A DNA stretch of 64,000 bases, from the IMG/VR virus record IMGVR_UViG_3300035180_001778, positions 186,001 through 250,000 of that record. One strand, 5' to 3'. How positions within the stretch are numbered: position 1 is the first letter of the stretch; every line of letters starts with the position of its first letter. The position numbers and the translations under genes were made by a program. The notes under the pieces are model-generated. The model had not been told where the DNA came from. It made no database searches and saw nothing but the letters and a program-made list of their open reading frames with translations. Below, piece by piece: positions 20,463-52,904 of the stretch.

Positions 20463-20465
20463 GGG

Positions 20466-21155
20466 TCACCGTGCCACGCTTGAAGCGCGGTCCTCCCAAC
20501 CATCCATCTTCGTTGCGAAGCGGTTGAAGAAGAGATCGATCTGCTCCGGCGAGAGGATCTCCTCAGCGATCTCCTGTAGAGTCGAAACCCACAGTTGGAA
20601 GACCTTCTGGAACCGCTCCCCGCGGAAGTCGACGACGTCCCCGCCGAGCTTCTTCATCTCCAGCTCGATGTTGGCGATCTTCGTGAGAGCTTCGATCCGG
20701 CGGCTGGAGACTTGTGCCGTGTCCTTGCCGTACTTCTCGGTCTCACTCCGCTGGAAGGCCAGTGCAGCCTGCTCCTTCGCGATCTCGGAGCGAATGACAC
20801 GGAGCATGACCATCGCCTCGCCATGCCCACTGGCGGCAATGACGACGGGGTCCGTGGCGATGTACTTCCGCTTCTCCTCGCTCATCTCGGCGTGGTATTC
20901 GAGGTCCGAGATGTCCGGCTTCCGATTAACGGTGCGCGGACGACCTCGGCTCCTCTTGACCTTGATGATGCCGTCCTTGTCGGCGAGCGAGTGCAGAGGG
21001 AGCTTCCGCACGTTGTCCGGTAGGACCTCGGCTTCTTCTTCCTCCGCATCATCCGGCTCGACCGGATCCGCCCCCGGATCCGTCTCGTCATAGGCCTCAT
21101 CAACGGCGTCTTCGAGCGTCGCGTCCTTGATGGTTTCGTCGGTTGCAGTTGCCAT
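20466..21155 (-). CDS. Probable terminase small subunit
   Basis: Directly upstream of terL; AT-hook-like RGRPR; helical. Confidence 0.5.
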   Translation of the reverse strand: MATATDETIKDATLEDAVDEAYDETDPGADPVEPDDAEEEEAEVLPDNVRKLPLHSLADKDGIIKVKRSRGRPRTVNRKPDISDLEYHAEMSEEKRKYIATDPVVIAASGHGEAMVMLRVIRSEIAKEQAALAFQRSETEKYGKDTAQVSSRRIEALTKIANIELEMKKLGGDVVDFRGERFQKVFQLWVSTLQEIAEEILSPEQIDLFFNRFATKMDGWEDRASSVAR

Positions 21156-21156
21156 T

Positions 21157-21558
21157 TTACTTCAGGTTCTTCCCGGCTGGAGGGGTGTCCCCGCCGCCTT
21201 CGGTCCGAATGAGGTACTGAGAGAGGTTCTTGACGGTGTCCCAACCCTTGTCCTTGTGGACCTGAGTACGAAGCACCTTGTCCTGGTCTTCGCCGGTCTC
21301 AGCGAAGTTGAGGACGCTCATGCTGCGAGGCGAAGGAGAAAAGACATCCGAAGGCCGGATGTCCCGTCGATCCGGCTCCACAGCATCATCGTGGCTGTCA
21401 TCCGTCCTCGCGTTGTCCTTTTGAATCTTCTCGTCAATCCCCCGTGTACGGTTGATGGGGGTCGCAAGCTCGCGATCCCGCTTCCGTTGCCCGGCGGGTT
21501 GATCCGCCTGAGCAAGGAAGCGAGCCACGACCCGCCTGACAAGAGCAGGGCCAATCAC
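21157..21558 (-). CDS. Small virion protein (RVVARF motif)
   Basis: Starts MIGPALVRRVVARFLAQA. Confidence 0.6.
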   Translation of the reverse strand: MIGPALVRRVVARFLAQADQPAGQRKRDRELATPINRTRGIDEKIQKDNARTDDSHDDAVEPDRRDIRPSDVFSPSPRSMSVLNFAETGEDQDKVLRTQVHKDKGWDTVKNLSQYLIRTEGGGDTPPAGKNLK

Positions 21559-23810
21559 AACCTGAACCCCTGGTTGGCCGTCCCCAGCTCGACATCGACG
21601 TCAGCCGCCGTCGTGACAGGGTTGAGGTCGATGTCCATCGCGCTGTGCTGCATCTCGTACTCGACCATCATCGACTGACCGTTGTTCATGATCTGGCTGA
21701 ACGGGATCTCGGTCGCCGCTCCCGAAGCCATAATCTCCCGCTGTTGAGCGAGCTTGTCGTAGTAGGGCGGCTCCTCAACCAGAGGCTTGTTGAGCTTCGA
21801 GCAGAAGCCCGAACGAGTCTGAAGAACACACGACCCACAGCGTGAGCCGGTCTTCACATACTCGACCAGGCGAGCCCGATGCAGCCGGGAGGCCTCATCG
21901 CACCCCTTGCCGTAATCGTCGTAGATGCTCGGGTCGACGAAGTAGATCCCCTGGAGACCCTGCTCCGCAATGACCGGCCTCAAGTCCTCCGCTGATGCCG
22001 CCAAGTCCCGCGAATCGAACCGCCCCTTGAGGGCCATGAGAAGGTCCTTCCCGTAGAGGCCCTCATTCATGAAGCGGGAGGCCACCTTCACGATGTCGCG
22101 ACGGACCAGCGCGCTGGTCCGTACCGCCTGAGACCGGCTGTGGAAGGCCTTGACAATCTCCATTCGAGTAGGTGTCGAGGTGGCCCCGCTCTTCAGAGAA
22201 GCCGACCGATGCATCTTCTGGAGAGCCTCCCGAGGAGAAGCACCCCATTCCGAAGCCGGGGGCCCCCACGGCTGAATACGCCCCGATGCCTTGTGCTCCT
22301 GGAGCTGGCGCTCTGCCGTATCCCAGGTGAGGACCGCTTCCGCGGACGCCACCAAGGGCTTCCCGTACAGGAGGCACCGACCGATCTTGTTGTAGATACA
22401 GCCACCACACTTGGAGCCGGCGACCATCACCTTGATGCCAGGGTTGTGCTTCGCGAGGAAGTCATGCCCAGTTCGGCAATCGTCGAAGCTCTCCTGTGTG
22501 GCGTAGAGCACCCCAAAGACACCCGCCTCACGGAAGATGGGACCCCAGTGGTCCTTGGTTGCCTGGAGGTCCGTCGATTGGAAGGACTGCTTCAAGATGC
22601 TCGCCACATCTTCCGCAGTTCGACCCTTGAGCATCTCCCTCCGAAGCAGCTCCACAACCGGCCGGGCTCGATCCGTGGACAGCATCATCTTGGTGGCCGC
22701 CTCCCTCTTCTTCGTGAGGTTGGCGACGGAGATGAGCTGTGCTTCCGCTTCGGTCCTGTCGATGAGCTGAGGTTTCGCCTGCTCTCCCATCCCCTGGTAG
22801 ACACGAGGAGCCAGCTCGACATCTGCGAGATCGGCCATGCGCTCCGCCATCTTGAGGAGGAAGCTCTCATCTTGAGAGTGAGCGATTGCGAAGAAGGTGT
22901 CTTGGGCTTGCGCGACCGTGAGCCCGCCCTTGGTAAAGGCCTTTGCCGCCGTCTCCCGAGCCGTTGCCCGGATGTAGGTGAGGTCCACCGGAAGCTGGAG
23001 CTGAGGCGTCTCTTCGATCGGACGAAGAAGACGGCCCGTTGCCTCTACAGGCTTCTGCTGAGGAGCCGGGCCTTCGAGACGGACGTTCGGAGCCAGCATG
23101 GCAAGACGCACACGTTCACGAGGAACGGAAGCCAAGTGCTGAATATCCTTCCCCTTTGCTCGCTGCATCTGCTCGACTTCCGCCGCGAGAGCATCCGAGT
23201 ACGGGACCTCGATCTGGATCTCCTTGTGGAAGACAGAGCAGGTCTGCGAAGCTCCCACAGGGCTCTTCTGGGAATGAATGCAGCCCGAGCACGCAGGCTT
23301 CGCAAGGACGAACTGAGCATCCCCTGCGAATTTGCGGACGAACTCGATGGGCTTCTTGGAGCCGCGATGGCAACCAGGGAAGTCCTCGGCAGAGATGTAG
23401 AGCTTGCCCAGAAGACCCCGCTCGGCGAGGACTCCAGCAATGACCGCACGATTCGCTCGAAGCGTGTTCTGGTCAAAGCGTCCCACAAGGGCCGCACGGA
23501 ACTTCTGGGTGTCGCTCGACTGCATCAGCGCGAGCCGAGCAACCTTCACGACATCCTCCGGCCCCGCCCGCAAGTTCCCTTGCGCGCTGAGATCGCCAAC
23601 CGTTCGAGGAGCATCCCCACGATTGGGGACGAAGCTCGTCGGATTCGACCCGTCATGCCCCCAGAGAGCCTCCAGGTCAGGAGACACGTCGAGGTTCTGC
23701 TTGGGGAGGTTGTCGAGATCCCGGTAGTCCGACTCATTGACGTTGAGCCAGTCGAGATTTGCGAGAGAACCATCCTTCAGAAATGAACCGAGATCGCCAA
23801 GATCACCCAC
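21555..23810 (-). CDS. Virion-module protein with three Cys-rich repeats
   Basis: Three GxxGxxY/F...C...CxxC...CxxxxKx(I/L) units. Confidence 0.7.
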   Translation of the reverse strand: MGDLGDLGSFLKDGSLANLDWLNVNESDYRDLDNLPKQNLDVSPDLEALWGHDGSNPTSFVPNRGDAPRTVGDLSAQGNLRAGPEDVVKVARLALMQSSDTQKFRAALVGRFDQNTLRANRAVIAGVLAERGLLGKLYISAEDFPGCHRGSKKPIEFVRKFAGDAQFVLAKPACSGCIHSQKSPVGASQTCSVFHKEIQIEVPYSDALAAEVEQMQRAKGKDIQHLASVPRERVRLAMLAPNVRLEGPAPQQKPVEATGRLLRPIEETPQLQLPVDLTYIRATARETAAKAFTKGGLTVAQAQDTFFAIAHSQDESFLLKMAERMADLADVELAPRVYQGMGEQAKPQLIDRTEAEAQLISVANLTKKREAATKMMLSTDRARPVVELLRREMLKGRTAEDVASILKQSFQSTDLQATKDHWGPIFREAGVFGVLYATQESFDDCRTGHDFLAKHNPGIKVMVAGSKCGGCIYNKIGRCLLYGKPLVASAEAVLTWDTAERQLQEHKASGRIQPWGPPASEWGASPREALQKMHRSASLKSGATSTPTRMEIVKAFHSRSQAVRTSALVRRDIVKVASRFMNEGLYGKDLLMALKGRFDSRDLAASAEDLRPVIAEQGLQGIYFVDPSIYDDYGKGCDEASRLHRARLVEYVKTGSRCGSCVLQTRSGFCSKLNKPLVEEPPYYDKLAQQREIMASGAATEIPFSQIMNNGQSMMVEYEMQHSAMDIDLNPVTTAADVDVELGTANQGFRL

Positions 23811-25002
23811 GGGGAACCCTCCTCATCATCGAATCGTCGAGCCTCTGATAAGGGTCGCGAATGTACGTTTCGTGTACCGGAGAATCCCAGTTGGGATGGG
23901 GGTTGCTGGGGTCTTGCCCACGAAGACTGGTGTTGGGGAGGTCGATGTCCTCCGTCGGAGGACCGCCATCCGCAGACGGAAGCTCGGACTCCGACACGGG
24001 CCCTGTAGCAACCCCATTGCCCTTCGGTCCCCGGTAGTAATCGGACCGATCGACTGCATCCTCCCCATCATTCGGGAGTTCCGAACCCCCTGACAGGTGC
24101 GGCAAAGTCGAAGCCGACCCGCCGGGTTGCCCCCTTTGGGCAATACCGTCACCGTGTGCTCCGAACCCCAAACCGTAGTCATTCGCATCGGTCGGAGTGA
24201 GGTCCATACCCGAGTCAGGCATCCCCGATTCGGCCACAGGGCCGCCCGTGTAGTCGTAGGAGTAGCGTGAAGACGCCTGCTTTTTGCTCGGAGGCTTGGG
24301 GCCTCCTCTATGCAAAGTCTCCTGGTCACCGCCGGCAGGAACCGCAGAGGCAGGTTCCTGCTTGTCGAAACGATCATCCCCTCCGGGCTTCCAGGAGACA
24401 TCCTTGCCTTCTCCGGGAGGCTTGCCCCCACCTTCCCCGTGCTCGACAGCCGCCATGTCCTCTTCAGCTTCCTCTTCGGGATTCTGGAGATTGTCTTCGG
24501 CGTCGGTGAGCAGGCGCTTCAGGTCGTCCGCCTCATCCTTCTCCAGCTCGGCAAGCCGGGGCTTCCAGTGGGGAGCGTTGATCTCGTCGTGAATCGTGTC
24601 GCAGATGGCCGACAGAGCTTCGGACGCCTCGTAGAGACGCTGCCGAATGTCCTTGACCCCCATGACATAGCCTCGGCCCCCCAACATCCCATCCGGGGAC
24701 ACCGTTGCAGACTTCACCCGGGCGAACTGACGGTGTGCCGTCAAGGTGTGGCCAAGGGAGATCGACAAGGCCCAGAGGGTCTGCGCAAGAGGCTTGAGCG
24801 AATGGGGGTCGAACTTGAAGTTCGCCGGGATGGTCCGCTTCGCATTGTCCGCGAAAGGAGAGGGCGCCATCCCGCCAGGCGGGGCTCCCGGAGGGGCCCC
24901 GGATGTGTCAGGAGGCAATACAGGACCCGCCGCGAGCCTCATACGCTCGGTCTTTGCGAGAGCCGCCAACGTCTTCTTGTACGCCACCATGGATCCTCTC
25001 AC
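23803..25002 (-). CDS. Hypothetical virion protein with disordered C-terminal half
   Basis: 399-aa coupled ORF; RLAA and KQAS motifs. Confidence 0.6.
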   Translation of the reverse strand: MRGSMVAYKKTLAALAKTERMRLAAGPVLPPDTSGAPPGAPPGGMAPSPFADNAKRTIPANFKFDPHSLKPLAQTLWALSISLGHTLTAHRQFARVKSATVSPDGMLGGRGYVMGVKDIRQRLYEASEALSAICDTIHDEINAPHWKPRLAELEKDEADDLKRLLTDAEDNLQNPEEEAEEDMAAVEHGEGGGKPPGEGKDVSWKPGGDDRFDKQEPASAVPAGGDQETLHRGGPKPPSKKQASSRYSYDYTGGPVAESGMPDSGMDLTPTDANDYGLGFGAHGDGIAQRGQPGGSASTLPHLSGGSELPNDGEDAVDRSDYYRGPKGNGVATGPVSESELPSADGGPPTEDIDLPNTSLRGQDPSNPHPNWDSPVHETYIRDPYQRLDDSMMRRVPRG

Positions 25003-25265
25003 CCCTTCACAGGCTCGACATCATCGAACAAGCGCTCGATGTAGAAAGAACCGTTCGATTCCTTGCGGATCGCCCAGAGGTCGTTGTCGCTCTTTCGGAC
25101 CAGAGTGTCCTCCGAAACCCTTTGAAACCCCTTGAGGTCCTGAAGGGAAGCCACCCGGCGCCGGGTGGTCTTGAGGGGCTTCACGATCTGCGGTTCTCGA
25201 TCGAACAGAGAGTCGAAGCCAGATGCCCCGGAGATCTGAATTTGGCTGAGATCAAAATTGGCCAT
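24999..25265 (-). CDS. Hypothetical protein
   Basis: GAGGA Shine-Dalgarno; RVAS motif. Confidence 0.6.
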   Translation of the reverse strand: MANFDLSQIQISGASGFDSLFDREPQIVKPLKTTRRRVASLQDLKGFQRVSEDTLVRKSDNDLWAIRKESNGSFYIERLFDDVEPVKG

Positions 25266-25271
25266 AGATCC

Positions 25272-26174
25272 TCACGAAATGACAAGAGTCACAACGACGT
25301 CTTGAGTGTAGTTCTGGCTGTACCCACTCACACGTAGGGTCTCTGTATAGGTCCCCGAACACAAGGTATCCGGAGGCTGAACCATGACCGTTGTTGTTTG
25401 AGAGGCCCCAGCGGCAAGAGTGTTGTAAGGAGGGTTGAAGGATACCAACCAATCGGTACAACCACAGAGCTTCTGGATCTGGTAATCGAGAAGAGACCCC
25501 GTAGGACCTGTGTTGGTGATCTGGAAGGTTTGGGTAGGAACCCCAGGGAACGGTCCGCTGATCGGCTTCGTCACAGCGAAGTTGAGAACAGTGGGGTTGA
25601 GGCTGATGATGGCCAACGGTCGAACCACAATCGCGATCGAGACTGTCTGCGGATTGTTCACCGCCGAGGGGTCTTGAATCAGGATCGTGGCTGCATACGG
25701 GCTGTTCGCAGACACGAGGGTCGTCGAGTCCACCGCAACACTCGACACGCCGGCAGAACCCGAGGCCAAACCCCCCACTCGTTGAGGGTCCATTGTGACC
25801 CAAGGAGCGGAGGTTGTGAGCACCGTGCCGAGGAGGGACCCGAAGACCCCGTTGTTGGTGATCTGAAGGTCTTGGGGGAGACTGAAGCCTCGACCCTCAT
25901 CAACCACAAAAGTCAGACTCGACAACCCCAACAGAATCGACGGAGCGAACTGTTGCTGGAGCAGCGTAATCGAGTTGCCCATCTCCTGAACGACAGCGCC
26001 AGGAAGCGGGATGGAGTCTCGAAGCAGCCCATAGGGGGTGGTGATGTCACGGATCTGGTAGGCAGGGGTTGCCTGCGAAAGATCGACGCGAGTTGTCCAC
26101 CGCCACAGACCGGAGGGGGTCTGGACTTTGAACTGGTATTCTTGGGTCTGAAGATTGGACGCAGAGATAGGCAA
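25272..26174 (-). CDS. Ig-like/BACON-type domain protein (two repeats)
   Basis: Two beta-sandwich-like repeats (LTF...QITN...WV and LNF...QITN...WL...GTYT). Confidence 0.6.
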   Translation of the reverse strand: MPISASNLQTQEYQFKVQTPSGLWRWTTRVDLSQATPAYQIRDITTPYGLLRDSIPLPGAVVQEMGNSITLLQQQFAPSILLGLSSLTFVVDEGRGFSLPQDLQITNNGVFGSLLGTVLTTSAPWVTMDPQRVGGLASGSAGVSSVAVDSTTLVSANSPYAATILIQDPSAVNNPQTVSIAIVVRPLAIISLNPTVLNFAVTKPISGPFPGVPTQTFQITNTGPTGSLLDYQIQKLCGCTDWLVSFNPPYNTLAAGASQTTTVMVQPPDTLCSGTYTETLRVSGYSQNYTQDVVVTLVIS

Positions 26175-26423
26175 GGCTCGGCCTCATCTCTGCGTAAACG
26201 ATAAAAGAAAACACTGATGTTTGCTGGAAAACAGCCGTGTTTCGAGATTTGCTGCCTCAGTGAGGCAAGGTGCCGCGACAAGAGCACCCTTCAGACGAAG
26301 CGAAATACGAAAATGCCAGGCTACCCCGAGACCTCGGGACCTGGCATAGGGTCTGCTTTGAGAAGGGCATGGATCGTGGAGGCGATGTTCCGATGCGTAC
26401 CTTCCGCCCTCTCGGGGGGCTAC

Positions 26424-27134
26424 CTACCCGTCGAGAGCATCGCCTCCACGATCCGCCCACTGAGGGAGCTTCACTTCACGGAGGATGTTGAACTTCTTGT
26501 TCGAGATGGCAGCGAAGACCTTGTGGTAGCGAAGGAAGCGACCATCCTTCCCCGAAGCCTCTCCAAGAAGCTTCACCGCCTTGAAGAACCGATGCCGGAC
26601 TCGACCTTGGGTCAAGCCAAGTCGCATCGCCACTTCGCTCTGACAGGTCGTCGACCACATCCCCACCAGAATGTCCACATCGATAGCCTTGAACGCAGGC
26701 TTGAGATGGCCATCTTGAATGAGGGGAAGGTCCCGCCGAAGCTCGGTCTCAGTGACTTGGGGGATTGACAGGAGGAACTTGATCCTCTGAAGACCTCGAT
26801 CAAGACGATAGGAGATGGCAGCTTGGGTGACGTCGAAGATCTCGGCGATATCCGCCTGACGCTTCTTTTGAATGTAGTAGAGGTAGATGAGATCGGCTTC
26901 CCTTTTGGGGATGCGATCTAGGAGCGGAGCCAGACGATCTTCGTAGTCCCCCGAGTAGAGGAACTCTGCGATGGGGTCGTCATCGTCCTCTTCTTGAATG
27001 AGGCCCGCGGCCGTATCCTCAAGAACCTGGAGACGATCGAGAAGGAGATCCTCCTCCTCGTTCCCTCGACCAGAAGGAAAGCGGTTGGCCAAAGTAGCCG
27101 GGTCTACCGAAATCACGTATCCAGTCGACATCAT
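26424..27134 (-). CDS. Sigma70 region-4-like transcription factor with two tandem HTH domains
   Basis: LDRIPKREADLIYLYY...QADIAEIFDVTQAAISYRLDRG plus a second QSEVAMRLGLTQGRVRHRF. Confidence 0.75.
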   Translation of the reverse strand: MMSTGYVISVDPATLANRFPSGRGNEEEDLLLDRLQVLEDTAAGLIQEEDDDDPIAEFLYSGDYEDRLAPLLDRIPKREADLIYLYYIQKKRQADIAEIFDVTQAAISYRLDRGLQRIKFLLSIPQVTETELRRDLPLIQDGHLKPAFKAIDVDILVGMWSTTCQSEVAMRLGLTQGRVRHRFFKAVKLLGEASGKDGRFLRYHKVFAAISNKKFNILREVKLPQWADRGGDALDG

Positions 27135-27145
27135 TTTCCTTCCGC

Positions 27146-29122
27146 CTACGTTGTATTCGTAGAGGACTCCGCCAGACGGAAGAACGCCGTCAGCATCGGC
27201 TCGACCTTCACATCAACATCTTGGAGGTGCTTCGAGGCTGCCTCCGGGTTCGTCATCGGGTGGACGAAAGTGAGATCCAGGTTCGAGACGAGGGCCATGA
27301 GTCCCACGTTCTTCCTGACCTGTGCCTCCGAGGCACGAATCTTCTCCTGCTGAGATTTTGTCAACTCTGGCAGAGAAGATGAAAAAACGCCATCAATGGA
27401 TCCGTATGTACGAATCAAATGCACGATGGTCTTCTCCTGGAGCCTGAAAACACCAGGAATCTTGTCCGAGCTGTCTCCCGACATGGCCCGGAAGTAGACC
27501 ATCTTGCCCGGAGGAACCCCGTATTCCTCCTTCACGGCATCGACATCGAAGAGCTTCTCGGGGCGAAGACCACTCGAAGGAGCGAGGACAGTCGTCGTTG
27601 CGGTCACGAGCTGGAGAAGATCCCGGTCGTTCGAGAGGATGACGTTCACATCCTCCTTGAGGCGCCCCGTGACGAGAGTCGCGATGGCATCGTCGGCCTC
27701 TTCCACCTCGTTGTAGGCCTGGACGACCCCAAAAGACGGTAGGGCCGCCTTCAGCCATTCGATCTGATCGCGACCCTCGAAGGGGATCCTCCCTGCCTTG
27801 TACCCGGGGAAGACGCTCATCCGACGCTGCGAGGAGTAGTCCCAGCACACGTAGATGGTGGCCTTGGGGAACCTCTTGCGAAGAGATATCAGGCTCCGAA
27901 GGAACCCCGTCACCACCCCAGAAGGACGCCCCTGCTTGTCCTTGAGCTGGTCGAGTCCCGGTGCCCGGCCACAGCGGACCGCGAGGTTGTTGCCGTCGAT
28001 GATGAGATTTTGGGTCATTGCAGGGTCTTCCACATCGTCTTCGATGTCCGTCAACTTGTCGCTCAAGGCCTTCAACCGGAGCTGAATGTCTTGGAGCCAC
28101 TCCAATTCGAGATACCGAGATTCGATGGGGGTGAGAGAGGGGGTGGTGTTGAAGGCTCGGACGACCGTCACCAACTGGTTGACGTCCGCAGTCCACCGAG
28201 AGAGACGTTGGACCTCCTCACCAAGCTGGAGCAGATGCTCCGTGGAAGAAGTCGAGGACATCGCCCGAAGGAAGTTCACCTGCTTCTGCCCCACCGAGAT
28301 CCACGTTGAAAGCTTGGCGTGCTCCCCCCACAACAGCTCCAACCGGATGGGTTCGAGGTCGAGCGCGTAACCAGCAACCAGGTCTTGATCGAGAAGGGCT
28401 CGCTCCTTGGTGGTCCACACATCAAGCATTGTGTAGGACGCCAATACATCAAGGAGCCCGTCAAAACCCTCCGAAGACCACTGCATGACAGGGAAAGCCG
28501 CCTCTCCCCATTGCTGAAGGGTCATCCATCGGGTCTGGTAGGTCAGAGAACTCTTCTCCCCCTTCGCAACAAGCCGGAGTCCAGCTCGGGGGAAGGTGAT
28601 GAGAGACTCCTTTGAGCGGAGCTGAATGTAGACCTGGACTTCATCCTTCTCCGGGATGTCCTCGATGACCTTCGCCTTGACCAGCCGGTAGGGCCCCGAG
28701 AGAATGAGCACGAGGTCCCCCACCTCGATCCCCTGGTTCTCTTCTGCTTCAATCTGACGACGAAGCTTGAGCACATCCCGATCTGGAACGTAGGCGATTC
28801 TGCGTGTCGACCGAAAACGACTCCGGTCGACGTGGCTGATGACCCCCTGTACGTATTTGCTTCCTTCGAGCCGGTAGTACTTCTCTTCGGCATGAGCCCG
28901 CCGAATGAAGGCGTACCCTTCGAGGAGGTACTTGATGACCCTGTCCCCACCCACCTGAGTGACGGACGCGGGGATGAACACGTCCGCATCTCGAAGATGG
29001 TGCCGGATGGACTGCTTGATGAGATCCGGATCTTCCCCATCCGCCTTGGGCCCAAGCTCAAGAGCAACCCACTCCGACGGCTTTGCGGGGTCAATGACAG
29101 GTTTGATTTGGCGTGATGCCAT
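27146..29122 (-). CDS. NusG (NGN+KOW) fused to a Pol I-type 5'-3' exonuclease/flap nuclease
   Basis: N-terminal VFIP...LLEGYAFI...GDLVLILSGPY; C-terminal LIIDGNN, EADDAIATL, SNDRDLLQL and GDSSDKIPGV. Confidence 0.8.
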   Translation of the reverse strand: MASRQIKPVIDPAKPSEWVALELGPKADGEDPDLIKQSIRHHLRDADVFIPASVTQVGGDRVIKYLLEGYAFIRRAHAEEKYYRLEGSKYVQGVISHVDRSRFRSTRRIAYVPDRDVLKLRRQIEAEENQGIEVGDLVLILSGPYRLVKAKVIEDIPEKDEVQVYIQLRSKESLITFPRAGLRLVAKGEKSSLTYQTRWMTLQQWGEAAFPVMQWSSEGFDGLLDVLASYTMLDVWTTKERALLDQDLVAGYALDLEPIRLELLWGEHAKLSTWISVGQKQVNFLRAMSSTSSTEHLLQLGEEVQRLSRWTADVNQLVTVVRAFNTTPSLTPIESRYLELEWLQDIQLRLKALSDKLTDIEDDVEDPAMTQNLIIDGNNLAVRCGRAPGLDQLKDKQGRPSGVVTGFLRSLISLRKRFPKATIYVCWDYSSQRRMSVFPGYKAGRIPFEGRDQIEWLKAALPSFGVVQAYNEVEEADDAIATLVTGRLKEDVNVILSNDRDLLQLVTATTTVLAPSSGLRPEKLFDVDAVKEEYGVPPGKMVYFRAMSGDSSDKIPGVFRLQEKTIVHLIRTYGSIDGVFSSSLPELTKSQQEKIRASEAQVRKNVGLMALVSNLDLTFVHPMTNPEAASKHLQDVDVKVEPMLTAFFRLAESSTNTT

Positions 29123-29125
29123 GGA

Positions 29126-30586
29126 CTATCCTCGGCTGGGCCAAGTTCGCTCGAACTCTCGCCGCCATTCATCCGGAGTCAACATACGAAGGTCGTCTGC
29201 CGGATCCCCACGTCGGGGAAAAGAAACCGGGACATGGACGTGATCGCGACCCCGAGCTTTGTTCACAGGGACGCCCTTGTGATCCAGCTCAGTCAGGGCA
29301 CAGACATCGCCAGAACCAATGGGACCCACCCCATCGAATCGAGTACCGTCGGGCTTCTTCTCCGGCTTCTTCACTTCCGGCAAGACCTGGACTGCCGGCG
29401 GAATATACCCAGCCGGGGCCACCACACTGGGAGTGATCGAAGGGTCAACCGTCAAGCTGATCACAGGAGCTTGAACAGGAGCCGGAGCCTGAACGGGAGC
29501 TGCCGTGACCACCTGAATGGGAGCCGCCATGGGGACCCCCGCGACCGACGGAGCAGGAATGCCCCCTGCCAGATTGAGGATGTCGCAGAAGAGATTCACC
29601 CTTGTGGTGTTCCTCCGCTGAAGGAAGTACTCCGAGAGCTTGAGGGTGTTCACGCCGAACGCTTCGTAGACCTTCTGACCGAGTGCGCGGTCGACGTAGA
29701 CGAAGTCAGCGAACATGTTGTTCGCCATTCGGTATGAATTCATGGCCGCTTCGGCGAGGCCATCAGCCACATCTTGAGGAGAGACCTGCTCACAAGCCTG
29801 TCCTACCAACTCGATCGCACGCTGAGGAGTCCCGAGTGAGAGCATGATCTCGTAGTACGTCGAGACGAGCGGGAGGCGGAGGTACTCCCGCACATTGGCG
29901 AGATTGACATCCCCCATTTGCCCGATCATCTCCAGCCGGTTGAGGACATCCCGAACGTGCCCCCCGGAGTAGTCGATGACAGTGAGCACAGCGTCATCCT
30001 CGAAGGAGACCCCTTCCGCCGTGAGGATGGACTTCATCCTTCCGAGGATGTCCTCTCGGGTCACCTTTCGAATGGCGTAGTCTTCGCACCGGGACCGAAT
30101 CGTCGCCCGGATCTTCTCCACTTCCGTCGTGCAGAAGATCCCGACGAGCTTGTTCTCCTCCAAAGGCTTGAGGAGAACATCCTGTGCATCCCGGGTCATG
30201 CGATGCGCCTCATCGAAGAGGTGGATCCGCTTCGAGGCCCCATAGACCGCGAAGGGCAGCTCCTCGACGAGGGCTCGCATGTGGTCGACAGTCCCGCAGC
30301 TCGCCGCATCTCGCTCGACGAATGCGAGCGAGGTTTCGGAGAGAATATACAGGCAGTTGTCGCACTCGTTACAAGGCTCAGGGTTGGCCAAGTCGATCGC
30401 CTGGCAGAGCATGGCCCTTGCCATGATCCGAGCAAGCGTCGTCTTCCCCTGACCGTGACCCCCAGCGAAGATGTAGTTCTTGCTGAGGGCCGTTCCGTCA
30501 CGAAGGCGTGTCTGGAGGATCTGGACAGTGCCTCGCTGGCCGAGGACGTCCGAGAACTTACGGGGCCTGTACTTGGTGTCCCACAC
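29126..30586 (-). CDS. dnaX: DNA polymerase III gamma/tau (clamp loader)
   Basis: KYRP, GGHGQGKTT, PCNECDNC, DEAH and TIRSRC motifs. Confidence 0.9.
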   Translation of the reverse strand: MWDTKYRPRKFSDVLGQRGTVQILQTRLRDGTALSKNYIFAGGHGQGKTTLARIMARAMLCQAIDLANPEPCNECDNCLYILSETSLAFVERDAASCGTVDHMRALVEELPFAVYGASKRIHLFDEAHRMTRDAQDVLLKPLEENKLVGIFCTTEVEKIRATIRSRCEDYAIRKVTREDILGRMKSILTAEGVSFEDDAVLTVIDYSGGHVRDVLNRLEMIGQMGDVNLANVREYLRLPLVSTYYEIMLSLGTPQRAIELVGQACEQVSPQDVADGLAEAAMNSYRMANNMFADFVYVDRALGQKVYEAFGVNTLKLSEYFLQRRNTTRVNLFCDILNLAGGIPAPSVAGVPMAAPIQVVTAAPVQAPAPVQAPVISLTVDPSITPSVVAPAGYIPPAVQVLPEVKKPEKKPDGTRFDGVGPIGSGDVCALTELDHKGVPVNKARGRDHVHVPVSFPRRGDPADDLRMLTPDEWRREFERTWPSRG

Positions 30587-30592
30587 AGGTTT

Positions 30593-31084
30593 TCAGTGCG
30601 CCGTAGCGGACTCCCCCTCAGAGGACGACATCACGATATCGTCCACCATGTCTTCGATCTCGATGGCCTTGGCGACGCTCGCGAACGCAGATAGGGTCTC
30701 GTTCCAGGCACCGTGCCGACGGAGAATCGAGGTGAACTCCTCGACATCCGGCGTACGGAGAACCCAGACCATGTCCCCGGTCTTGTCGTCTTCCTCTCCC
30801 GTGCAGTGCTCCAGGAGGTGATCGACGAGCGCCGTTCGCTTGTTCTCCGTCAGCTCATTCCAGGTGTCCTCGGCGACCTCGATGATGAAGTCGCAGTCGA
30901 TGAAGAACTGCGAGATGCCCGATAGCTTTCGGGCCTTGCCGAGGACGGGACGGCCAGACTTCGTCGAGCCCTTGTCCACGAAGGCGTACTTCAACCGTGC
31001 GGTGGCCAGCTCCGGGTGATACCCGGGGATCAGGTTCTTCGCAATGGTTGCGATCGTCTCACTCTCACTGTAAATCTTACCCAT
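30593..31084 (-). CDS. Phage putative metallopeptidase-family protein with degenerate active site
   Basis: ALVDHLLEHC...PDVEEF...RRHG pattern. Confidence 0.6.
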   Translation of the reverse strand: MGKIYSESETIATIAKNLIPGYHPELATARLKYAFVDKGSTKSGRPVLGKARKLSGISQFFIDCDFIIEVAEDTWNELTENKRTALVDHLLEHCTGEEDDKTGDMVWVLRTPDVEEFTSILRRHGAWNETLSAFASVAKAIEIEDMVDDIVMSSSEGESATAH

Positions 31085-31808
31085 AGGGAAACTCCATCAG
31101 GCTACCCGACCTCACATGAGATCGGAGGTACTCTCCAAGTCGGGCATCTCCCCAGGCCTCCCAGAGGTCTCCAGGATCCTTGACCAGCTTGCCGCCAACC
31201 AAAGTGACCCGGGGGTAAACTACCCGACGAACATCGAATTCCCGGCCGTACTGTTGGCGAAACCTATCGTACGCCCTATTTCCGGCGGAATCCATATCAT
31301 ATCCGATCCACACGCGACGTACAAGACGTCGTAGGATCCGAACAAATCCCTCCGTGACCCGAGCAGTCAGCGTCGAAGCAATACCAGGAAGGAACCTCTG
31401 GAGGGGTAGAAGATCGAAGCCACCCTCGACCAGAAGGATCTCCCCCGTCTCCCACACTGTGGGCATTGCCTGAGCGAGCCCGAACCCCACAGCCTCATCC
31501 TGCGCGAGGATGAAGTCCATGTAGCCCCCACGCTCCCTATCGACGTGCCGAAACTGGAGGCCTCGAATCTCGCCGATGGTGTTCGTAATCGGAAGGACGT
31601 AGCAATCGTCGAGCTTCCCCCCATCCCCCGACCAAGACACGAAGTCTTGGGGGTAGTTGATTGCCGGTAGAACCCGGTCAACGTACCCAATTTGAAATTG
31701 ACTGATCTGTTCGTCAGTGACCCCGCGTCCCCACAAGGACTCACGAACACGCTCGGGTAGCTCAGCTCCAGATTCAGATTCAGCGACGAACTCGTCAAGC
31801 CAGGTCAC
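31077..31808 (-). CDS. DnaG-like primase catalytic core (TOPRIM) without zinc-binding domain
   Basis: RGVT...FQIGY, LVEGGFD, YDMDSAG and KDP motifs. Confidence 0.8.
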   Translation of the reverse strand: MTWLDEFVAESESGAELPERVRESLWGRGVTDEQISQFQIGYVDRVLPAINYPQDFVSWSGDGGKLDDCYVLPITNTIGEIRGLQFRHVDRERGGYMDFILAQDEAVGFGLAQAMPTVWETGEILLVEGGFDLLPLQRFLPGIASTLTARVTEGFVRILRRLVRRVWIGYDMDSAGNRAYDRFRQQYGREFDVRRVVYPRVTLVGGKLVKDPGDLWEAWGDARLGEYLRSHVRSGSLMEFPYG

Positions 31809-32394
31809 GGCCGACCACCATGATCGTCTGGTTGGCTCGCTGGATCATGACCCCCACGTAATCGCGGACTCGCGTGTAGAACCCCAACTTCTCCGGTGAA
31901 GGAAGCACGAGAGCTGCCCCATCAGGAAGAGCAGCCACGAAGACACGGAGGTCGCCCTCCAAGGTCGTCACGAACCCCCCCTTCACAGATGCCGCCTTCT
32001 CCCCGCAGACTTCCTTGAGGGTGGACGACGAGAGGATGAGGGACTTCGGTTCGAGTCCTGATCTTCGGAGACGCTCAACTGCCACGGGGACCGAGCTACA
32101 CCGATTTCCCCACTGGCTTCGAGTCGAAAGATCCAGAACATCCCGGTAGAGAGCAAGGACGAGCACATCCGGGTCCCCTTCCTCGGAGAGAGGGGAGAAG
32201 CCGTACCTGGCGTCCCCCTCCTTGGAAGGCCGTGTGCCGACGAAGCCACCCCGGGCATTGGTGACCACCAAGGGAACCGAGCTGGGGTTCACCTTCGCAG
32301 CACACAGGTAGGGGGTAGAGAACCCCTGCTTACCCGAAGCCCTCTGCCGATGCCGGTCGACAACCAGCACTTGCTCCAGGATTGAGAAGCTCAT
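31795..32394 (-). CDS. Hypothetical protein, possible degenerate capsid-protein paralog
   Basis: ATGA-coupled start at 32394. The C-terminal half aligns by eye with the capsid C-terminal half. Confidence 0.5.
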   Translation of the reverse strand: MSFSILEQVLVVDRHRQRASGKQGFSTPYLCAAKVNPSSVPLVVTNARGGFVGTRPSKEGDARYGFSPLSEEGDPDVLVLALYRDVLDLSTRSQWGNRCSSVPVAVERLRRSGLEPKSLILSSSTLKEVCGEKAASVKGGFVTTLEGDLRVFVAALPDGAALVLPSPEKLGFYTRVRDYVGVMIQRANQTIMVVGRDLA

Positions 32395-32948
32395 TGCAGG
32401 GAGTTGGGGTCCGGGAGGTACTTCACGAGGTCCGTGGGGATTCGGATGGGCTCGGGTCGAATCTGAGTCAGGCGAAACCACAGACGGGCCCACCAAGGAA
32501 TCCGAGGCATTCCTTCTCCCAGGGCCCACGCGAGGCCATGAACCTCGGGCATGTTCTCTCGAAGCCAATCGGGGCTATCGATCTGCTCCGCGTACTCCGT
32601 CCACAACTGGTGCTTGTTGAGGGTGGGCTCGAACAAGGGACACTGCTGTGCATCGGAGGGATCTTCACAGATCCGGATCGCGGCTGAGGTGATGTCCTCG
32701 ACCCCATACATGCAGAGACCGATCGTCTGAAGGACAGGAAGGTGGCGACCCCCAGGACCCGAGCCCATCGTGATTCGGTTGTAGTTCGGGTTGGGCTCGT
32801 CATCGATGGTCCGACGAACATCGAGGGGCTGCCTGTAGTTGTACGTGCAGCGGTGAGGCAACCTCTCCCTGGCAGCCTTCACGCGATCCTCCAGCTCCTT
32901 CACGAGCAGAAAACGAATGCGGCCCATGATTTCAGATTGCGTTCTCAC
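32391..32948 (-). CDS. Hypothetical Cys-containing protein
   Basis: GTGA-coupled start; four spaced Cys residues. Confidence 0.5.
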   Translation of the reverse strand: MRTQSEIMGRIRFLLVKELEDRVKAARERLPHRCTYNYRQPLDVRRTIDDEPNPNYNRITMGSGPGGRHLPVLQTIGLCMYGVEDITSAAIRICEDPSDAQQCPLFEPTLNKHQLWTEYAEQIDSPDWLRENMPEVHGLAWALGEGMPRIPWWARLWFRLTQIRPEPIRIPTDLVKYLPDPNSLQ

Positions 32949-33604
32949 CGATGACTCCGAAGGCGGCGAATGTCTAGCCACGTCGTCTCATCCGCACCCA
33001 GCTCTTCAGACCCTTGGTACGCGATGTCCGCGTGTTCGAGGAAGGCTTGCTTGTGGGTGACAAACAAAATGTCGATGTTGGTCGATTCCGCGAGACGCTG
33101 AAGGAAACGTCCGGCTGCATCCACGTACTCATCCGAGACTGCCGCAAGCGTCTCGTCGAGTAGGAGCACAGGGAACCGCTTCAAGCGGAGAAGAAGAAGG
33201 AGACGGAGGATCAGGGAGACGATGCTCGCGGGTCCACCCCCAAAAGAATCAAGGGGGTGTCCTCGAACGCCCGTCTCCTCGTCTCCCTGTCGAATGAAGA
33301 AGTCGATGGAGACCCTGTTCCGCGCCTGTCCGATCGCTGCCTCGAAAGATAGCTTCTGATCGAAGAAGATGGTCTTCAACCCCTCGGAGACAAGAGCCTC
33401 CAAAGTTTTGACGCGATCCGTGACGAGCTTGTCCAGAAGAACGCGAAGAAGCTCCCCAACCTTGAAGAGCTTCTCGATCTGGGCCGAGAGGGTCAACACT
33501 TCCGCGCTTTTCGACTCCAAGTCCGCCCGCTTTTGATCGCGGAGGGCCTGGAGTCGAGCTGCTTTCAACGCGAGAGCTTCGGTCCTCGCAACCCAGTCCT
33601 TCAT
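32945..33604 (-). CDS. SbcC/Rad50-like ATPase, C-terminal half
   Basis: Coiled coil, signature-like SFGGG, Walker B LLLDE, H-loop FVTH. Confidence 0.8.
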   Translation of the reverse strand: MKDWVARTEALALKAARLQALRDQKRADLESKSAEVLTLSAQIEKLFKVGELLRVLLDKLVTDRVKTLEALVSEGLKTIFFDQKLSFEAAIGQARNRVSIDFFIRQGDEETGVRGHPLDSFGGGPASIVSLILRLLLLLRLKRFPVLLLDETLAAVSDEYVDAAGRFLQRLAESTNIDILFVTHKQAFLEHADIAYQGSEELGADETTWLDIRRLRSHR

Positions 33605-33633
33605 GCTTCTGTCCTACACCCGTCCGCCCCGAA

Positions 33634-34914
33634 TCAGTCCTTCGAGGGCATGTACCGGGTCACGCGGCACTCGTGCGACCCTTCCGGCCGGTTCTCCGCC
33701 GTGATGTCCCCGACCACCTTGCCGTTGTCGTCCATGAGGAACTCGTCGATGGTGCGGAACATGGCCCGTTCCTTGGGGGACTTGTCGTCGGCCTTGATGA
33801 CCGCGATCCGAAGCTGGACGTCCATGCCCTTCACGCCGTCGATGAGGTCGATGAGCCGATCGATGTTGACGTTGAAGGTGATCTCTTGCTCCTCGGAGCC
33901 GTCGATGACGACAGCCGGGAGCGGGAAGCTCCGAGCCTTGCCCTTCGTCTCCGCGACCCGGAAGAGCATCGTGGCCTGGCGTTGCACCTTCTCGCCCACC
34001 TCGACGTCACGGAACTCGTTGACGACCAGAGTGATCTTGTCTTCCTTGGAATCCAGCTCCGAGCGCATGAAGCGGAGGGCGTCCACCGTCAGCGACTTGG
34101 GGAGCCCAAGGATGAGCTTGTCCATCGTCTTCGAGTAGTACGAGAACTTCCCGTGAACGGCCTCGTGCTTCGCCCACCCAAGGGCGTTCCCCTTGGAGTC
34201 GACGGCGAAGATCATGTTGTCGCCCGTCACGAGCTTCACTTCCCCGTCCGACTTCGCGAGGAAGCTCGTGAAGAAAGACATGTGCTGGACGTGGATCGAG
34301 AAACCCTTGTCCACGAAGGCAGCGCTGTAGAACCAGAACGCCTGGAAGGTGTTCGCAGCGAAGAGGTGCCCTGAGCCCTTCTCCCACTCGTGCTTGGACT
34401 TGTCGAAGAGCTGGAGCGTCTTGAAGTGCTCCGGGATCCGCGTGTCGTCGGCCTTCCCGAGGAAGGGCTTGGCCAGCGTCATCGCCTCCTTGAATAGGCC
34501 CACGGGGAAGGACCGCTCATCCTTGGCTCCGGCGAGATCCCGATCACACGAGGCCATGAGCTTCGGGTCGAAGCTCGCGCGATCGGCCCCAGCTCCCGAG
34601 TTCGTGCTCCAGGAGACCGTGAAGTTGTCCGCTTCCACCTTGGACTCGATCGTGATCTCGTCATCCCGAAGGAAGCGAAAGCCGCTCGTGAACTCCGAGG
34701 GGAAGATGAAGGATCCCTCGGTGTCCGTCTCGTCACAGGAGATCGTGGCGCGAGCGACGTGGAGAGCATCGCGGGAGTAGATCGAGCAGAGGCCTCCCGT
34801 TCGGATGACGAAGAGGTAGCCGGCCCCGCCCGCGGGGGTCAGGGGACGCGGAGGGACGATCGAAACGATTGCGAGGGCCTTGATCAGGTCGGCGAGCTTG
34901 AGCGTGATTTTCAT
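33634..34914 (-). CDS. Divergent DNA polymerase III beta sliding clamp-like protein
   Basis: Start MKITLKLADLIKAL resembles the DnaN N-terminus; clamp-like size; complete clamp-loader set nearby. Confidence 0.6.
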   Translation of the reverse strand: MKITLKLADLIKALAIVSIVPPRPLTPAGGAGYLFVIRTGGLCSIYSRDALHVARATISCDETDTEGSFIFPSEFTSGFRFLRDDEITIESKVEADNFTVSWSTNSGAGADRASFDPKLMASCDRDLAGAKDERSFPVGLFKEAMTLAKPFLGKADDTRIPEHFKTLQLFDKSKHEWEKGSGHLFAANTFQAFWFYSAAFVDKGFSIHVQHMSFFTSFLAKSDGEVKLVTGDNMIFAVDSKGNALGWAKHEAVHGKFSYYSKTMDKLILGLPKSLTVDALRFMRSELDSKEDKITLVVNEFRDVEVGEKVQRQATMLFRVAETKGKARSFPLPAVVIDGSEEQEITFNVNIDRLIDLIDGVKGMDVQLRIAVIKADDKSPKERAMFRTIDEFLMDDNGKVVGDITAENRPEGSHECRVTRYMPSKD

Positions 34915-34936
34915 TCCATCCTCATTTGGAGAGTCG

Positions 34937-35209
34937 TTACTTCTTGTCGTAGCCGGCCAAGGAAGTCTCCACGGCCAGCAACTTGGTCTCGTACTCGGCA
35001 ATCTCCTGAAGGAGACTTGCCTCCGCCTTGTCCCTCTCCGCCGAGAGGTTCTTGGGGTCGTAGCCCGCAGCCTTCACTTCGGTGACCAGATCCGCGAGGT
35101 CTTCCTTGACCTTCTGGAGCTGCCCCTCGTACTGCGACTTCTTCTTCTGGGCGACTTCGGTTCGCCTCGATAGGTCGTCGATCTTCTTCTTGATCTCGTC
35201 CGGAGTCAT
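34937..35209 (-). CDS. Small coiled-coil protein (possible SbcC arm segment)
   Basis: Heptad-rich 90 aa; AAGGA Shine-Dalgarno. Confidence 0.6.
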   Translation of the reverse strand: MTPDEIKKKIDDLSRRTEVAQKKKSQYEGQLQKVKEDLADLVTEVKAAGYDPKNLSAERDKAEASLLQEIAEYETKLLAVETSLAGYDKK

Positions 35210-35219
35210 ACGTGTCCTT

Positions 35220-45267: not shown

Positions 45268-45447
45268 TCATCCTTGTCGGTAACTGCCCTCGGGTTTATC
45301 GAAGGCTTTCTTCTCGTCCCTTGCCTTCAATTCAGCAAGAGCTTCATCCGCTTTCTCAGCGGCATCTTTGAGGGAGTGGGAATGCCTTGCGTAATACCCC
45401 GAAATGATAGCGGCGTAAAACTGGCACCAGAGATCGCGGTCGCTCAT
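45268..45447 (-). CDS. Small hypothetical protein
   Basis: ATGA-coupled to the ligase stop (MSDRDLWCQFY...). Confidence 0.5.
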   Translation of the reverse strand: MSDRDLWCQFYAAIISGYYARHSHSLKDAAEKADEALAELKARDEKKAFDKPEGSYRQG

Positions 45448-50102: not shown

Positions 50103-50115
50103 CTAGGGGAACTCC

Positions 50116-51084: not shown

Positions 51085-51085
51085 G

Positions 51086-52223: not shown

Positions 52224-52227
52224 GGGC

Positions 52228-52876: not shown

Positions 52877-52904
52877 GCTGGGGTCGATCAAAGAAACGAA
52901 AGGT

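What the first reader, a model, noticed from the sequence alone, without database searches (positions are those of the whole stretch)
27146..29122. NusG-KOW fused to a 5'-3' exonuclease/flap nuclease
Seen: one 658-aa ORF with NGN and KOW domains (about aa 15-185), a helical linker with regularly spaced Trp, and a Pol I-type 5' nuclease with its acidic motifs intact. It sits next to the sigma-4 protein and dnaX. Known: NusG rides on elongating RNA polymerase; 5' nucleases remove RNA primers and flaps. Inference: an RNA polymerase-tethered nuclease for R-loop or conflict removal, torpedo-like termination, or replication-coupled late transcription. I do not know this fusion from characterised proteins.
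Basis: partly seen in the sequence, partly recalled or inferred. Interest (0 to 1): 0.7.

Follow-up and report, generated by a model that had tools for sequence, protein, structure and literature searches.

The report
Phage NusG-like factor fused to flap nuclease
A family of very large uncultivated phages encodes one protein that joins a module predicted to clamp onto the host's RNA polymerase to the phage's only flap/primer-removing DNA nuclease, a pairing not described in characterised proteins that hints at a physical link between transcription and DNA replication or repair.

Summary
Window 27146-29122 (-) is one intact 658-aa ORF. It has a NusG-type NGN+KOW module (aa 17-186), a five-helix Trp-bearing spacer (aa 195-365) and a Pol I-type 5' nuclease (aa 370-650) with all acidic residues invariant. 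Contigs from four metagenome runs lie on it without a difference.

It is not an assembly accident. More than 1,000 metagenomic proteins share the architecture. In 54 IMG/VR phage loci, on contigs up to 452 kb, 51 have a single ORF and 3 are split. All 54 have a sigma-region-4 gene directly downstream, and 52 have a DnaX-like clamp loader upstream.

Smaller relatives carry a stand-alone 170-180-aa NusG-like gene in the same slot. One relative fuses the module to a full sigma factor.

The fused nuclease is the only FEN in this genome and in three 94-100% complete relatives. The phage PolA has no 5' nuclease, and no phage RNA polymerase was detected.

A controlled complex prediction places the NGN on the tip of the beta' clamp helices (0.62; best control 0.01).

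Best reading: an RNA-polymerase-tethered flap or RNA-DNA-hybrid nuclease that works with the sigma-4-like neighbour. The exact task is unproven. I found no paper describing it.

The parts
28739..29074 (-). NGN domain (aa 17-128) of the NusG-like module
   Evidence: AlphaFold strands and helices with pLDDT >90. Foldseek hits are NusG/RfaH/Spt5 only. The profile hits PDB NusG at 5e-10. The hallmark 'EGYAF' strand (G69, Y70, A71, F72) is 90-100% conserved (Y70 and F72 invariant). Predicted contacts to beta' 278-294 come from residues 20, 22, 66-70, 95, 108-123.
28565..28732 (-). KOW domain (aa 131-186)
   Evidence: Pfam KOW covers aa 134-163 at E 0.004, below the cut-off. It aligns to the NusG KOW of 2lq8 and 1nz9. 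The model shows a five-strand barrel. Invariant residues are G131, D136, G143, E158, R169, S170, P178 and R179.
28028..28540 (-). Lineage-specific helical spacer (aa 195-365): five long helices, each bearing a Trp
   Evidence: Helices 195-213, 217-251, 258-289, 294-325 and 330-365 have pLDDT 50-75. Identity among homologues is only 22% and length varies from 131 to 194 aa. No Pfam or NCBIfam family matches. The structure atlas gives only generic helical matches. The spacer stays with the NusG half in split relatives.
27518..28006 (-). 5' nuclease catalytic domain (aa 373-535, PF02739)
   Evidence: E 1.8e-27. Foldseek matches M. smegmatis FenA at 9e-18 with TM by target 0.77, and ExoIX at 0.84. 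The invariant residues are D376, D428, E474/E475, D477/D478, D499, D501, Y441, K442 and R445.
27266..27517 (-). H3TH DNA-binding domain of the 5' nuclease (aa 536-619, PF01367)
   Evidence: E 3e-13. The G549-D550-x-S552-D553 motif is invariant.
27146..27265 (-). C-terminal helices (aa 620-658) with the conserved [DE]x[IL]LxxFF motif at aa 640-648, plus the stop codon
   Evidence: The motif is seen in most of 23 homologues. It is a helix in the model. Whether it is structural or a clamp-binding peptide was not tested.
26424..27134 (-). Sigma-region-4-like protein (236 aa, two HTH units, no region 2); obligate neighbour of the NusG-like gene
   Evidence: Pfam Sigma70_r4 covers aa 71-119 at E 2.5e-13, with a second weak r4-like stretch. 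The closest PDB matches are region 4 of SigF and FliA. It lies directly downstream in 54 of 54 IMG/VR loci, also next to stand-alone NusG-like genes.
29126..30586 (-). DnaX-like clamp-loader ATPase (486 aa), conserved upstream neighbour
   Evidence: Pfam DNA_pol3_delta2 at E 5e-24 and phrog_5846 clamp loader at 3e-52. It lies upstream in 52 of 54 loci.

Best explanation
The gene encodes a phage-specific member of the NusG/Spt5 family whose NGN domain docks on the beta' clamp helices of the host RNA polymerase. Through a KOW domain and a helical spacer of about 170 aa, this module carries a catalytically intact Pol I-type 5' flap / 5'-3' nuclease.

The nuclease is the only FEN the phage has, so it also has to mature lagging-strand fragments, working with the phage PolA, NAD-ligase, primase and clamp loader.

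Tethering it to transcribing polymerase would place flap and RNA-DNA-hybrid cleavage where transcription meets replicating phage DNA. The candidate substrates are R-loops left behind the polymerase, and RNA primers, nicks or flaps in freshly replicated template. The protein acts together with the sigma-region-4-like protein encoded immediately downstream, at the boundary between the replication genes and the packaging and head genes.

Shown: the architecture, its conservation, the synteny, that this is the sole FEN, and the absence of a detectable phage polymerase.
Predicted: NGN docking on beta'.
Inferred: the substrate and the biological purpose.
For: Domains and intact catalytic residues.

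Conservation: more than 1,299 homologues, most of those listed covering about 96% of the query. 51 of 54 IMG/VR loci have one ORF. Fused forms fall in one part of the NusG-module tree, and split forms are nested inside it at two starred nodes.

RNA polymerase link: in the complex prediction with E. coli beta' 1-345 the score was 0.62 and the best of 3 controls 0.01. This mark was reached by 58 of 80 solved complexes and 2 of 110 mismatched pairs. The three runs share at least 86% of contacts and the partner pLDDT is at least 76. The interface is on beta' 278-294, the clamp-helix tip where NusG and sigma region 2 bind (PMC7892883).

Genetic link to sigma: a sigma-r4 gene is always adjacent. P0172 has sigma r2+r4 fused to this module at 39% identity. 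P0034 carries a one-off NusG-FEN-sigma4 fusion.

Host polymerase is used: no Rpb2_6 or T7-type RNAP was found in this genome or in three 94-100% complete relatives, and extra sigma r2 genes occur in those relatives.

Replication role of the FEN: there is a single PF02739 hit in this genome and in the complete genomes G003-G005. PolA is present and no second 5'-nuclease-domain match exists anywhere in the genome. No RNase HI or PolB was found. LigA, delta, delta', Toprim primase, RecA and RecD2 lie in the same module.

Linker and FEN travel together: stand-alone relatives of 171-180 aa lack both.
Against: There is no experimental datum and no RNA run.

The docking test used E. coli beta', not the unknown host's. 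Because NusG-RNAP complexes are solved, the pass may reflect likeness rather than retained binding.

The predicted contact residues are not more conserved than the rest of the NGN (0.61 against 0.65, permutation p 0.75).

Single-sequence NusG scores lie under the curated cut-offs.

Split forms in several lineages show that covalent linkage is dispensable.

Nothing here identifies the nuclease substrate or shows that the two halves act on the same complex.
Confidence: 0.45

Rival explanations
1. Two jobs in one chain without mechanistic coupling. The NusG-like module plus the sigma-4-like protein form a late-transcription or antitermination pair. The FEN is simply the replisome's primer-removal enzyme. 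The two were joined only because their genes were neighbours in one operon.
For: Stand-alone NusG-like genes sit in the same slot, clamp loader - NusG-like - sigma4, in smaller relatives. The split has occurred at least twice, with a proper TTG start and an AGGAG Shine-Dalgarno motif for the FEN gene. The FEN is the sole 5' nuclease, so a replication role is needed anyway.
Against: The fusion is kept across relatives down to 35-57% identity and in 51 of 54 loci. A dedicated spacer of 131-194 aa appears only together with the FEN and is retained on the NusG half after fission. That pattern suggests an adaptor rather than an accident.
Confidence: 0.25
2. Replication-coupled late transcription, analogous to T4 gp55/gp33/gp45. 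The NGN occupies the beta' clamp helices (the sigma region 2 site). The sigma-4-like protein occupies the beta flap and upstream DNA. The FEN domain, a nick/flap binder from a family whose members often bind sliding clamps, senses replicating DNA. Late genes downstream would then be switched on only on replicated templates.
For: The order clamp loader - NusG-like - sigma4 is conserved at the replication/packaging boundary, with TerL, portal and protease downstream. The docking site equals the sigma R2 site. The neighbour has region 4 only. The module is fused to a complete sigma in P0172. A conserved LxxFF motif lies at the C-terminus.
Against: No NusG-family protein is known to support promoter opening (established knowledge). 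Stand-alone relatives lack the FEN altogether. The LxxFF motif lies in a modelled helix and may be structural. Clamp binding was not tested. The putative clamp at 33634-35001 is only a weak phrog_947 hit with no PDB relative. Conserved synteny may only reflect shared ancestry.
Confidence: 0.15
3. The NusG-like module no longer binds RNA polymerase. It serves as a nucleic-acid- or replisome-binding handle for an ordinary replication FEN.
For: Scores against curated NusG models are below cut-off. The predicted contact residues show no extra conservation. The genomic setting is a replication module.
Against: The docking prediction passed with clean controls at the canonical site. The module is constantly adjacent to sigma modules and twice fused to them. 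All fold matches are NusG/Spt5.
Confidence: 0.1
4. A torpedo-like terminator: the nuclease degrades nascent RNA from its 5' end until it dislodges the polymerase.
For: A 5'-3' nuclease is attached to an elongation-factor module.
Against: Pol I-type FENs cleave flaps and RNA within hybrids, not free single-stranded RNA. Known torpedoes are Xrn- or RNase J-type enzymes (established knowledge). The H3TH duplex-binding motif is intact.
Confidence: 0.04
5. An artefact: two genes joined by an assembly or frameshift error.
For: Some relatives have two ORFs. One contig, L009, shows probable indel errors.
Against: Contigs of four runs match with 0 differences and 0 gaps. The protein is 100% and 95% identical in two other IMG/VR contigs. 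51 of 54 loci have one ORF.
Confidence: 0.01

Closest known systems
NusG and its specialised paralogues (RfaH, LoaP, UpxY, ActX)
   Same: It has the two-domain NGN+KOW build. All Foldseek PDB hits with E <= 1e-3 belong to this family. The profile hits NusG chains. Docking is predicted on the beta' clamp helices, as for NusG and RfaH.
   Different: It scores below the curated cut-offs of every NusG/LoaP/UpxY model. It is phage-encoded. It carries a helical spacer of about 170 aa and a nuclease after the KOW domain. It is always paired with a sigma-region-4-like gene and a clamp loader. Only 3 matches were found in 185,579 species genomes, all on MAG contigs.
Pol I 5' nuclease domain and stand-alone bacterial or phage FENs (M. 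smegmatis FenA, E. coli ExoIX, T5 D15, T4 RNase H, SPO1 gp32.85)
   Same: It passes Pfam PF02739 and PF01367 above cut-off. TM by target is 0.77-0.84. All metal-binding acidic residues, the arch Lys/Arg and the H3TH motif are present. As in T4, T5 and T7, the 5' nuclease is not part of the phage polymerase chain.
   Different: The N-terminal 370 aa are a transcription-factor module plus spacer. None of the GenBank phage FENs matched aligns to the N-terminal part.
T4 late transcription machinery (gp55, gp33, gp45 sliding clamp)
   Same: Functional analogy only. Phage proteins occupy the clamp-helix site and the beta-flap site of host polymerase and link transcription to replication proteins (PMC7892883). 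Here an NGN and a sigma-4-like protein are encoded next to a clamp loader.
   Different: There is no sequence or fold relation to gp55 or gp33. No clamp interaction was tested. A nuclease, not a clamp, is the attached replication component.
Eukaryotic nucleases recruited to elongating Pol II (XPG of the FEN superfamily in transcription-coupled repair and R-loop processing; the Rat1/Xrn2 torpedo)
   Same: The concept is the same: a structure-specific or 5'-3' nuclease brought to a transcribing polymerase whose universal elongation factor is Spt5/NusG (established knowledge).
   Different: In those systems recruitment is non-covalent and goes through other factors. Here the nuclease is part of the NusG-like polypeptide itself.

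Membership tests
NusG/Spt5 family | NGN alpha/beta domain followed by a KOW beta-barrel | tested here: met
   AlphaFold model of aa 1-192 has pLDDT 89.7. All 48 Foldseek PDB hits with E <= 1e-3 are NusG, RfaH or Spt5, best 5e-8. A profile of 23 homologues hits only NusG chains, best 2lq8 at 5e-10.
NusG/Spt5 family | Score above the curated cut-offs of the family models (PF02357, PF00467, TIGR00922) | tested here: not met
   PF02357 scores 14.3 bits against 22.2. KOW scores 17.3 against 22.3. TIGR00922 scores 24.3 against 135.7. More distant stand-alone relatives do pass PF02357 and/or KOW (P0204, P0195, P0222), which bridges this module to the family.
NusG/Spt5 family | NGN binds the beta' clamp helices of RNA polymerase | tested here: inconclusive
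   Prediction only. Score 0.62 against best control 0.01; the mark was reached by 58 of 80 solved and 2 of 110 mismatched pairs; runs agree at 86% or more; partner pLDDT at least 76; interface on beta' 278-294. E. coli beta' was used, not the host's. Contact residues are not specially conserved.
NusG/Spt5 family | KOW domain recruits Rho, ribosomal S10 or another partner | not testable with these tools
   The host is unknown.
RfaH/LoaP/UpxY specialised antiterminators | Match to the NCBIfam models for LoaP or UpxY above their cut-offs | tested here: not met
   LoaP scores 19.1 bits against 125. UpxY scores 13.9 against 100.
Pol I-type 5'-3' exonuclease / FEN | PIN-like N-terminal domain and H3TH domain above Pfam cut-offs | tested here: met
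   PF02739 scores 96.5 bits against 34.3. PF01367 scores 50.5 against 40. Foldseek matches FenA at 9e-18 with TM by target 0.77.
Pol I-type 5'-3' exonuclease / FEN | Complete set of metal-binding carboxylates plus the arch Lys/Arg | tested here: met
   D376, D428, E474, E475, D477, D478, D499, D501, D550, D553, Y441, K442 and R445 are invariant or nearly so in 24 homologues.
Pol I-type 5'-3' exonuclease / FEN | Flap and 5'-3' exonuclease activity | not testable with these tools
   This needs an enzyme assay.
T4-type clamp-activated late transcription | Factors bind the sliding clamp through a terminal hydrophobic peptide and activate late promoters | not tested
   Only a conserved C-terminal LxxFF motif and the synteny with the clamp loader are available. 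The putative clamp at 33634-35001 is a weak phrog_947 hit.

The most novel reading that the evidence does not exclude
The NusG-like NGN and the sigma-region-4-like neighbour together act as a two-piece substitute for sigma. The NGN sits on the clamp helices where sigma region 2 binds, and the sigma-4-like protein sits on the beta flap and upstream DNA. The attached FEN reads nicks or flaps, or the clamp, on replicating DNA. This would be a T4-like replication-coupled late switch built from an elongation factor and a nuclease, and it would show a NusG-family protein acting at initiation.
Probability: 0.12. Interest if true: 0.9.

Novelty: new variant of a known kind. Interest (0 to 1): 0.68.

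Why it matters
NusG/Spt5 is the only transcription factor shared by all cellular life, and its known paralogues recruit ribosomes, Rho or nothing.

A paralogue that carries an active DNA-replication nuclease would be a natural, covalent bridge between RNA polymerase and lagging-strand or R-loop processing. It would give a direct handle on how transcription and replication are reconciled on a heavily used template.

The family is large, with more than 1,000 sequence clusters. It is a hallmark of a clade of 350-450-kb phages from sediments and microbial mats. Its partners (clamp loader, sigma-4-like protein) are fixed, and natural split and sigma-fused variants exist. Together these make the hypothesis testable with recombinant proteins even though no host is cultured.

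Tried and rejected
- Promoter and terminator scans of 20000-36000 gave counts at the shuffle expectation. No transcription unit could be defined.
- The helical spacer has no Pfam or NCBIfam family. The ESM Atlas gave no feature hit and only generic helical structure matches.
- I expected the predicted beta' contact residues to be the best conserved. They are not.
- Programmed frameshifting in the split relatives is rejected. The frame change is -1 in L010 and +1 in L012, and L010 has its own Shine-Dalgarno motif and TTG start.
- The split in L009 is probably due to assembly indels: the break lies inside the last spacer helix and neighbouring genes are also broken.
It does align with the start of the FEN gene in split relatives. 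It is neither supported nor excluded.
- Host assignment failed. Only three MAG contigs carry a relative, and MAG bin labels do not give reliable hosts.
- No RNA-seq run holds the locus.
- Seven literature searches found no paper on a NusG-nuclease fusion.
- C-terminal extensions of 200-400-aa NusG-like relatives have no Pfam domain.
Linker-sigma4, linker-FEN and FEN-clamp pairs were not run.
Full report
**1. What is there**

The window lies in a 350,469-bp IMG/VR virus record with GC 0.60 and an estimated completeness of 73%. The ORF at 27146-29122 (-) is 658 aa.

Its C-terminal 290 aa are a Pol I-type 5' nuclease. PF02739 covers aa 373-535 (E 1.8e-27) and PF01367 covers aa 536-619 (E 3e-13), both above the curated cut-offs. 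NCBIfam aligns it to the 5' nuclease part of DNA polymerase I and to stand-alone 5'-3' exonucleases. The closest solved structures are M. smegmatis Pol1 and FenA, Taq, ExoIX and T5 FEN. Every carboxylate of the two-metal site, the arch Tyr/Lys/Arg and the GDxSD of the H3TH motif are invariant or nearly so in 24 homologues.

The N-terminal 190 aa match NusG only weakly as a single sequence. A profile of 23 homologues, however, finds only NusG chains in the PDB (2lq8 at 5e-10). A confident model of aa 1-192 (pLDDT 89.7) retrieves only NusG, RfaH and Spt5. Between the two modules the full-length model (pLDDT 81) has five long helices at moderate confidence. This spacer is poorly conserved (22% identity, 131-194 aa long) and resembles no known domain. 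It has 8 Trp, roughly one per helix, of which two are conserved at 90% or more.

**2. It is real and conserved**

Contigs of four sediment and microbial-mat metagenome runs lie on 26400-30600 with no difference or gap. Two of those runs may be the source sample. Two other IMG/VR contigs encode the same protein at 100% and 95% identity.

The word-index search found more than 1,299 relatives, most of those listed being 590-660 aa and covering about 96% of the query at 38-57% identity. They come from contigs of up to 490 kb. IMG's automatic name for several is '5'-3' exonuclease/transcription antitermination factor NusG'.

In 54 IMG/VR loci that hold both halves, 51 have one ORF and 3 have two. 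Two further split lineages were read in detail. In L010/L011 the NusG-plus-spacer gene encodes 369 aa and the FEN gene 294 aa; the FEN gene has its own AGGAG and TTG start, the two overlap by 10 nt, and the arrangement is seen on 6 contigs. In L012 the products are 386 and 297 aa.

On a FastTree of the N-terminal module (midpoint root, moderate support), all 53 fused forms fall in one part of the tree. The split forms nest inside fused groups at two starred nodes. The fissions therefore look secondary.

The architecture is absent from 50,697 GenBank phage records and from AlphaFold DB cellular fold clusters. It is nearly absent from 185,579 species genomes, with three MAG contigs.

**3. Context**

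All genes around the ORF are on the minus strand. Upstream lies a replication and recombination module:
- RNR, NAD-ligase, delta and delta' subunits, and a RecD2-like helicase;
- RecA, SbcCD-like proteins, a PD-(D/E)XK nuclease, and a weak candidate sliding clamp;
- a Toprim primase, a phage metallopeptidase, and the DnaX-like clamp loader.

Downstream come the sigma-region-4-like protein, several unknowns, the large terminase, the portal and the prohead protease.

The order Toprim - metallopeptidase - clamp loader - NusG-FEN - sigma4 recurs in every relative inspected. The sigma4 gene is directly downstream in 54 of 54 loci, and the clamp loader is upstream in 52 of 54.

Smaller or more distant relatives carry a stand-alone NusG-like gene of 171-180 aa, with no spacer and no FEN, in exactly this slot (L077 and L079). 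The conserved core is therefore the pair NusG-like plus sigma4-like. The spacer and nuclease were added in the huge-phage clade.

One relative (P0172, 541 aa) joins a complete sigma factor (regions 2 and 4) to this NusG-like module at 39% identity. One 6-kb contig reads NusG-FEN-sigma4 as a single 840-aa ORF.

**4. Replication side**

PF02739 occurs once in this genome. It also occurs once, at the same locus, in each of three 94-100% complete relatives of 437-452 kb. The genome has a family A polymerase (a 964-aa ORF) and no second 5'-nuclease-domain match anywhere, and no family B polymerase or RNase HI was detected. The fused nuclease is therefore the only phage-encoded candidate for primer and flap removal.

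**5. Transcription side**

No multisubunit (Rpb2_6) or T7-type polymerase was detected in this genome or in the complete relatives. The T7-type search had no positive control, and very divergent jumbo-phage polymerases could escape Pfam. The relatives carry additional sigma region 2 genes. This fits the use of host polymerase.

I ran a controlled complex prediction of the N-terminal module (with its alignment) against E. coli beta' 1-345:
- Score 0.62 (runs 0.60, 0.67, 0.62); best of 3 controls 0.01.
- This mark was reached by 58 of 80 solved complexes and 2 of 110 mismatched pairs.
- The runs share at least 86% of contacts, and the partner pLDDT is at least 76.
- The confident contacts join NGN residues 20, 22, 66-70, 95 and 108-123 to beta' 278-294, the tip of the clamp helices.

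This is the site used by sigma region 2 and by NusG (PMC7892883).

Three caveats apply. The tool's verdict is 'supports, does not show'. Solved NusG-polymerase complexes may be remembered by the model. The contact residues are not more conserved than the rest of the domain.

**6. Interpretation**

Most likely (0.45): the protein rides on host RNA polymerase through its NGN domain and brings the phage's flap / RNA-DNA-hybrid nuclease to places where transcription meets replicating DNA. It works together with the sigma-4-like neighbour. Whether it clears R-loops behind the polymerase, or trims primers and flaps in newly replicated template, or does both, is inference.

The rivals are:
- two independent functions joined by operon adjacency (0.25);
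- a T4-like replication-coupled late-transcription switch in which the NGN and the sigma4-like protein occupy the two sigma sites (0.15);
- a repurposed module that no longer binds polymerase (0.10);
- a torpedo-like terminator (0.04);
- an artefact (0.01).

**7. Novelty**

Both domains are well known. The combination has been noticed only by automatic annotation. I found no paper on it, and the jumbo-phage comparative review listed contains no mention of NusG. I class it as a new variant of known kinds: a NusG paralogue with a nuclease effector, or equivalently a FEN with a polymerase-targeting module.

Noticed in passing
L008:3612-5237 (protein P0172): A 541-aa protein on an 18-kb phage-like contig joins Sigma70 region 2 and region 4 to the same NusG-like module (aa 321-491, 39% identical to the window's). 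This would tether sigma and an elongation-factor module that use the same site on the polymerase.
   Followed up: partly
L001:934-3456 (protein P0034): On one 6-kb contig the NusG-FEN ORF reads through into the sigma-4-like gene, giving an 840-aa triple fusion. Other relatives examined (e.g. L022, L023) keep a stop codon there. It may be a real fusion or a sequencing error.
   Followed up: partly
window 26424-27134 (-): The sigma-4-like neighbour has an acidic N-terminal region with a conserved peptide (GYVIxVDPxxLANR, also present in P0034) and two region-4-like helix-turn-helix units, but no region 2. It is the only sigma-like gene detected in this 73%-complete genome.
   Followed up: partly
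window 33634-35001 (-): A 455-aa protein kept in synteny upstream of the primase gives only a weak match to phrog_947 'DNA polymerase processivity factor' and has no PDB relative by sequence. It may be a divergent sliding clamp for the phage's DnaX/delta/delta' loader.
   Followed up: partly
window 45444-56015 (-): The phage carries bacterial-type replication and chaperone genes: NAD-dependent ligase with BRCT (45444-47450), RNR with ATP-cone (47847-50102), delta (50116-51084), delta' (51086-52048) and a GroEL-type chaperonin (54297-56015).
   Followed up: no
window 29078-29139: In runs X3 and X4 some contigs replace 60 nt at the dnaX / NusG-FEN junction by 17 other letters. This is a strain variant affecting the unconserved first ~15 residues of the ORF and the end of dnaX.
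   Followed up: no
window 27149-27205 (aa 640-648 of the ORF): A conserved [DE]x[IL]LxxFF motif near the C-terminus resembles PIP-like clamp-binding peptides, but it lies in a modelled helix.
   Followed up: no
G000:C1 last ~50 bases: The virus record ends in long runs of G and C, which looks like an assembly or read-end artefact. No terminal repeat was found.
   Followed up: no
proteins P0195, P0222, P0232, P0197, P0240 (one search hits): Several NusG-like relatives of 300-400 aa carry C-terminal extensions with no Pfam domain. The module may serve as a carrier for other unknown effectors in phages.
   Followed up: partly
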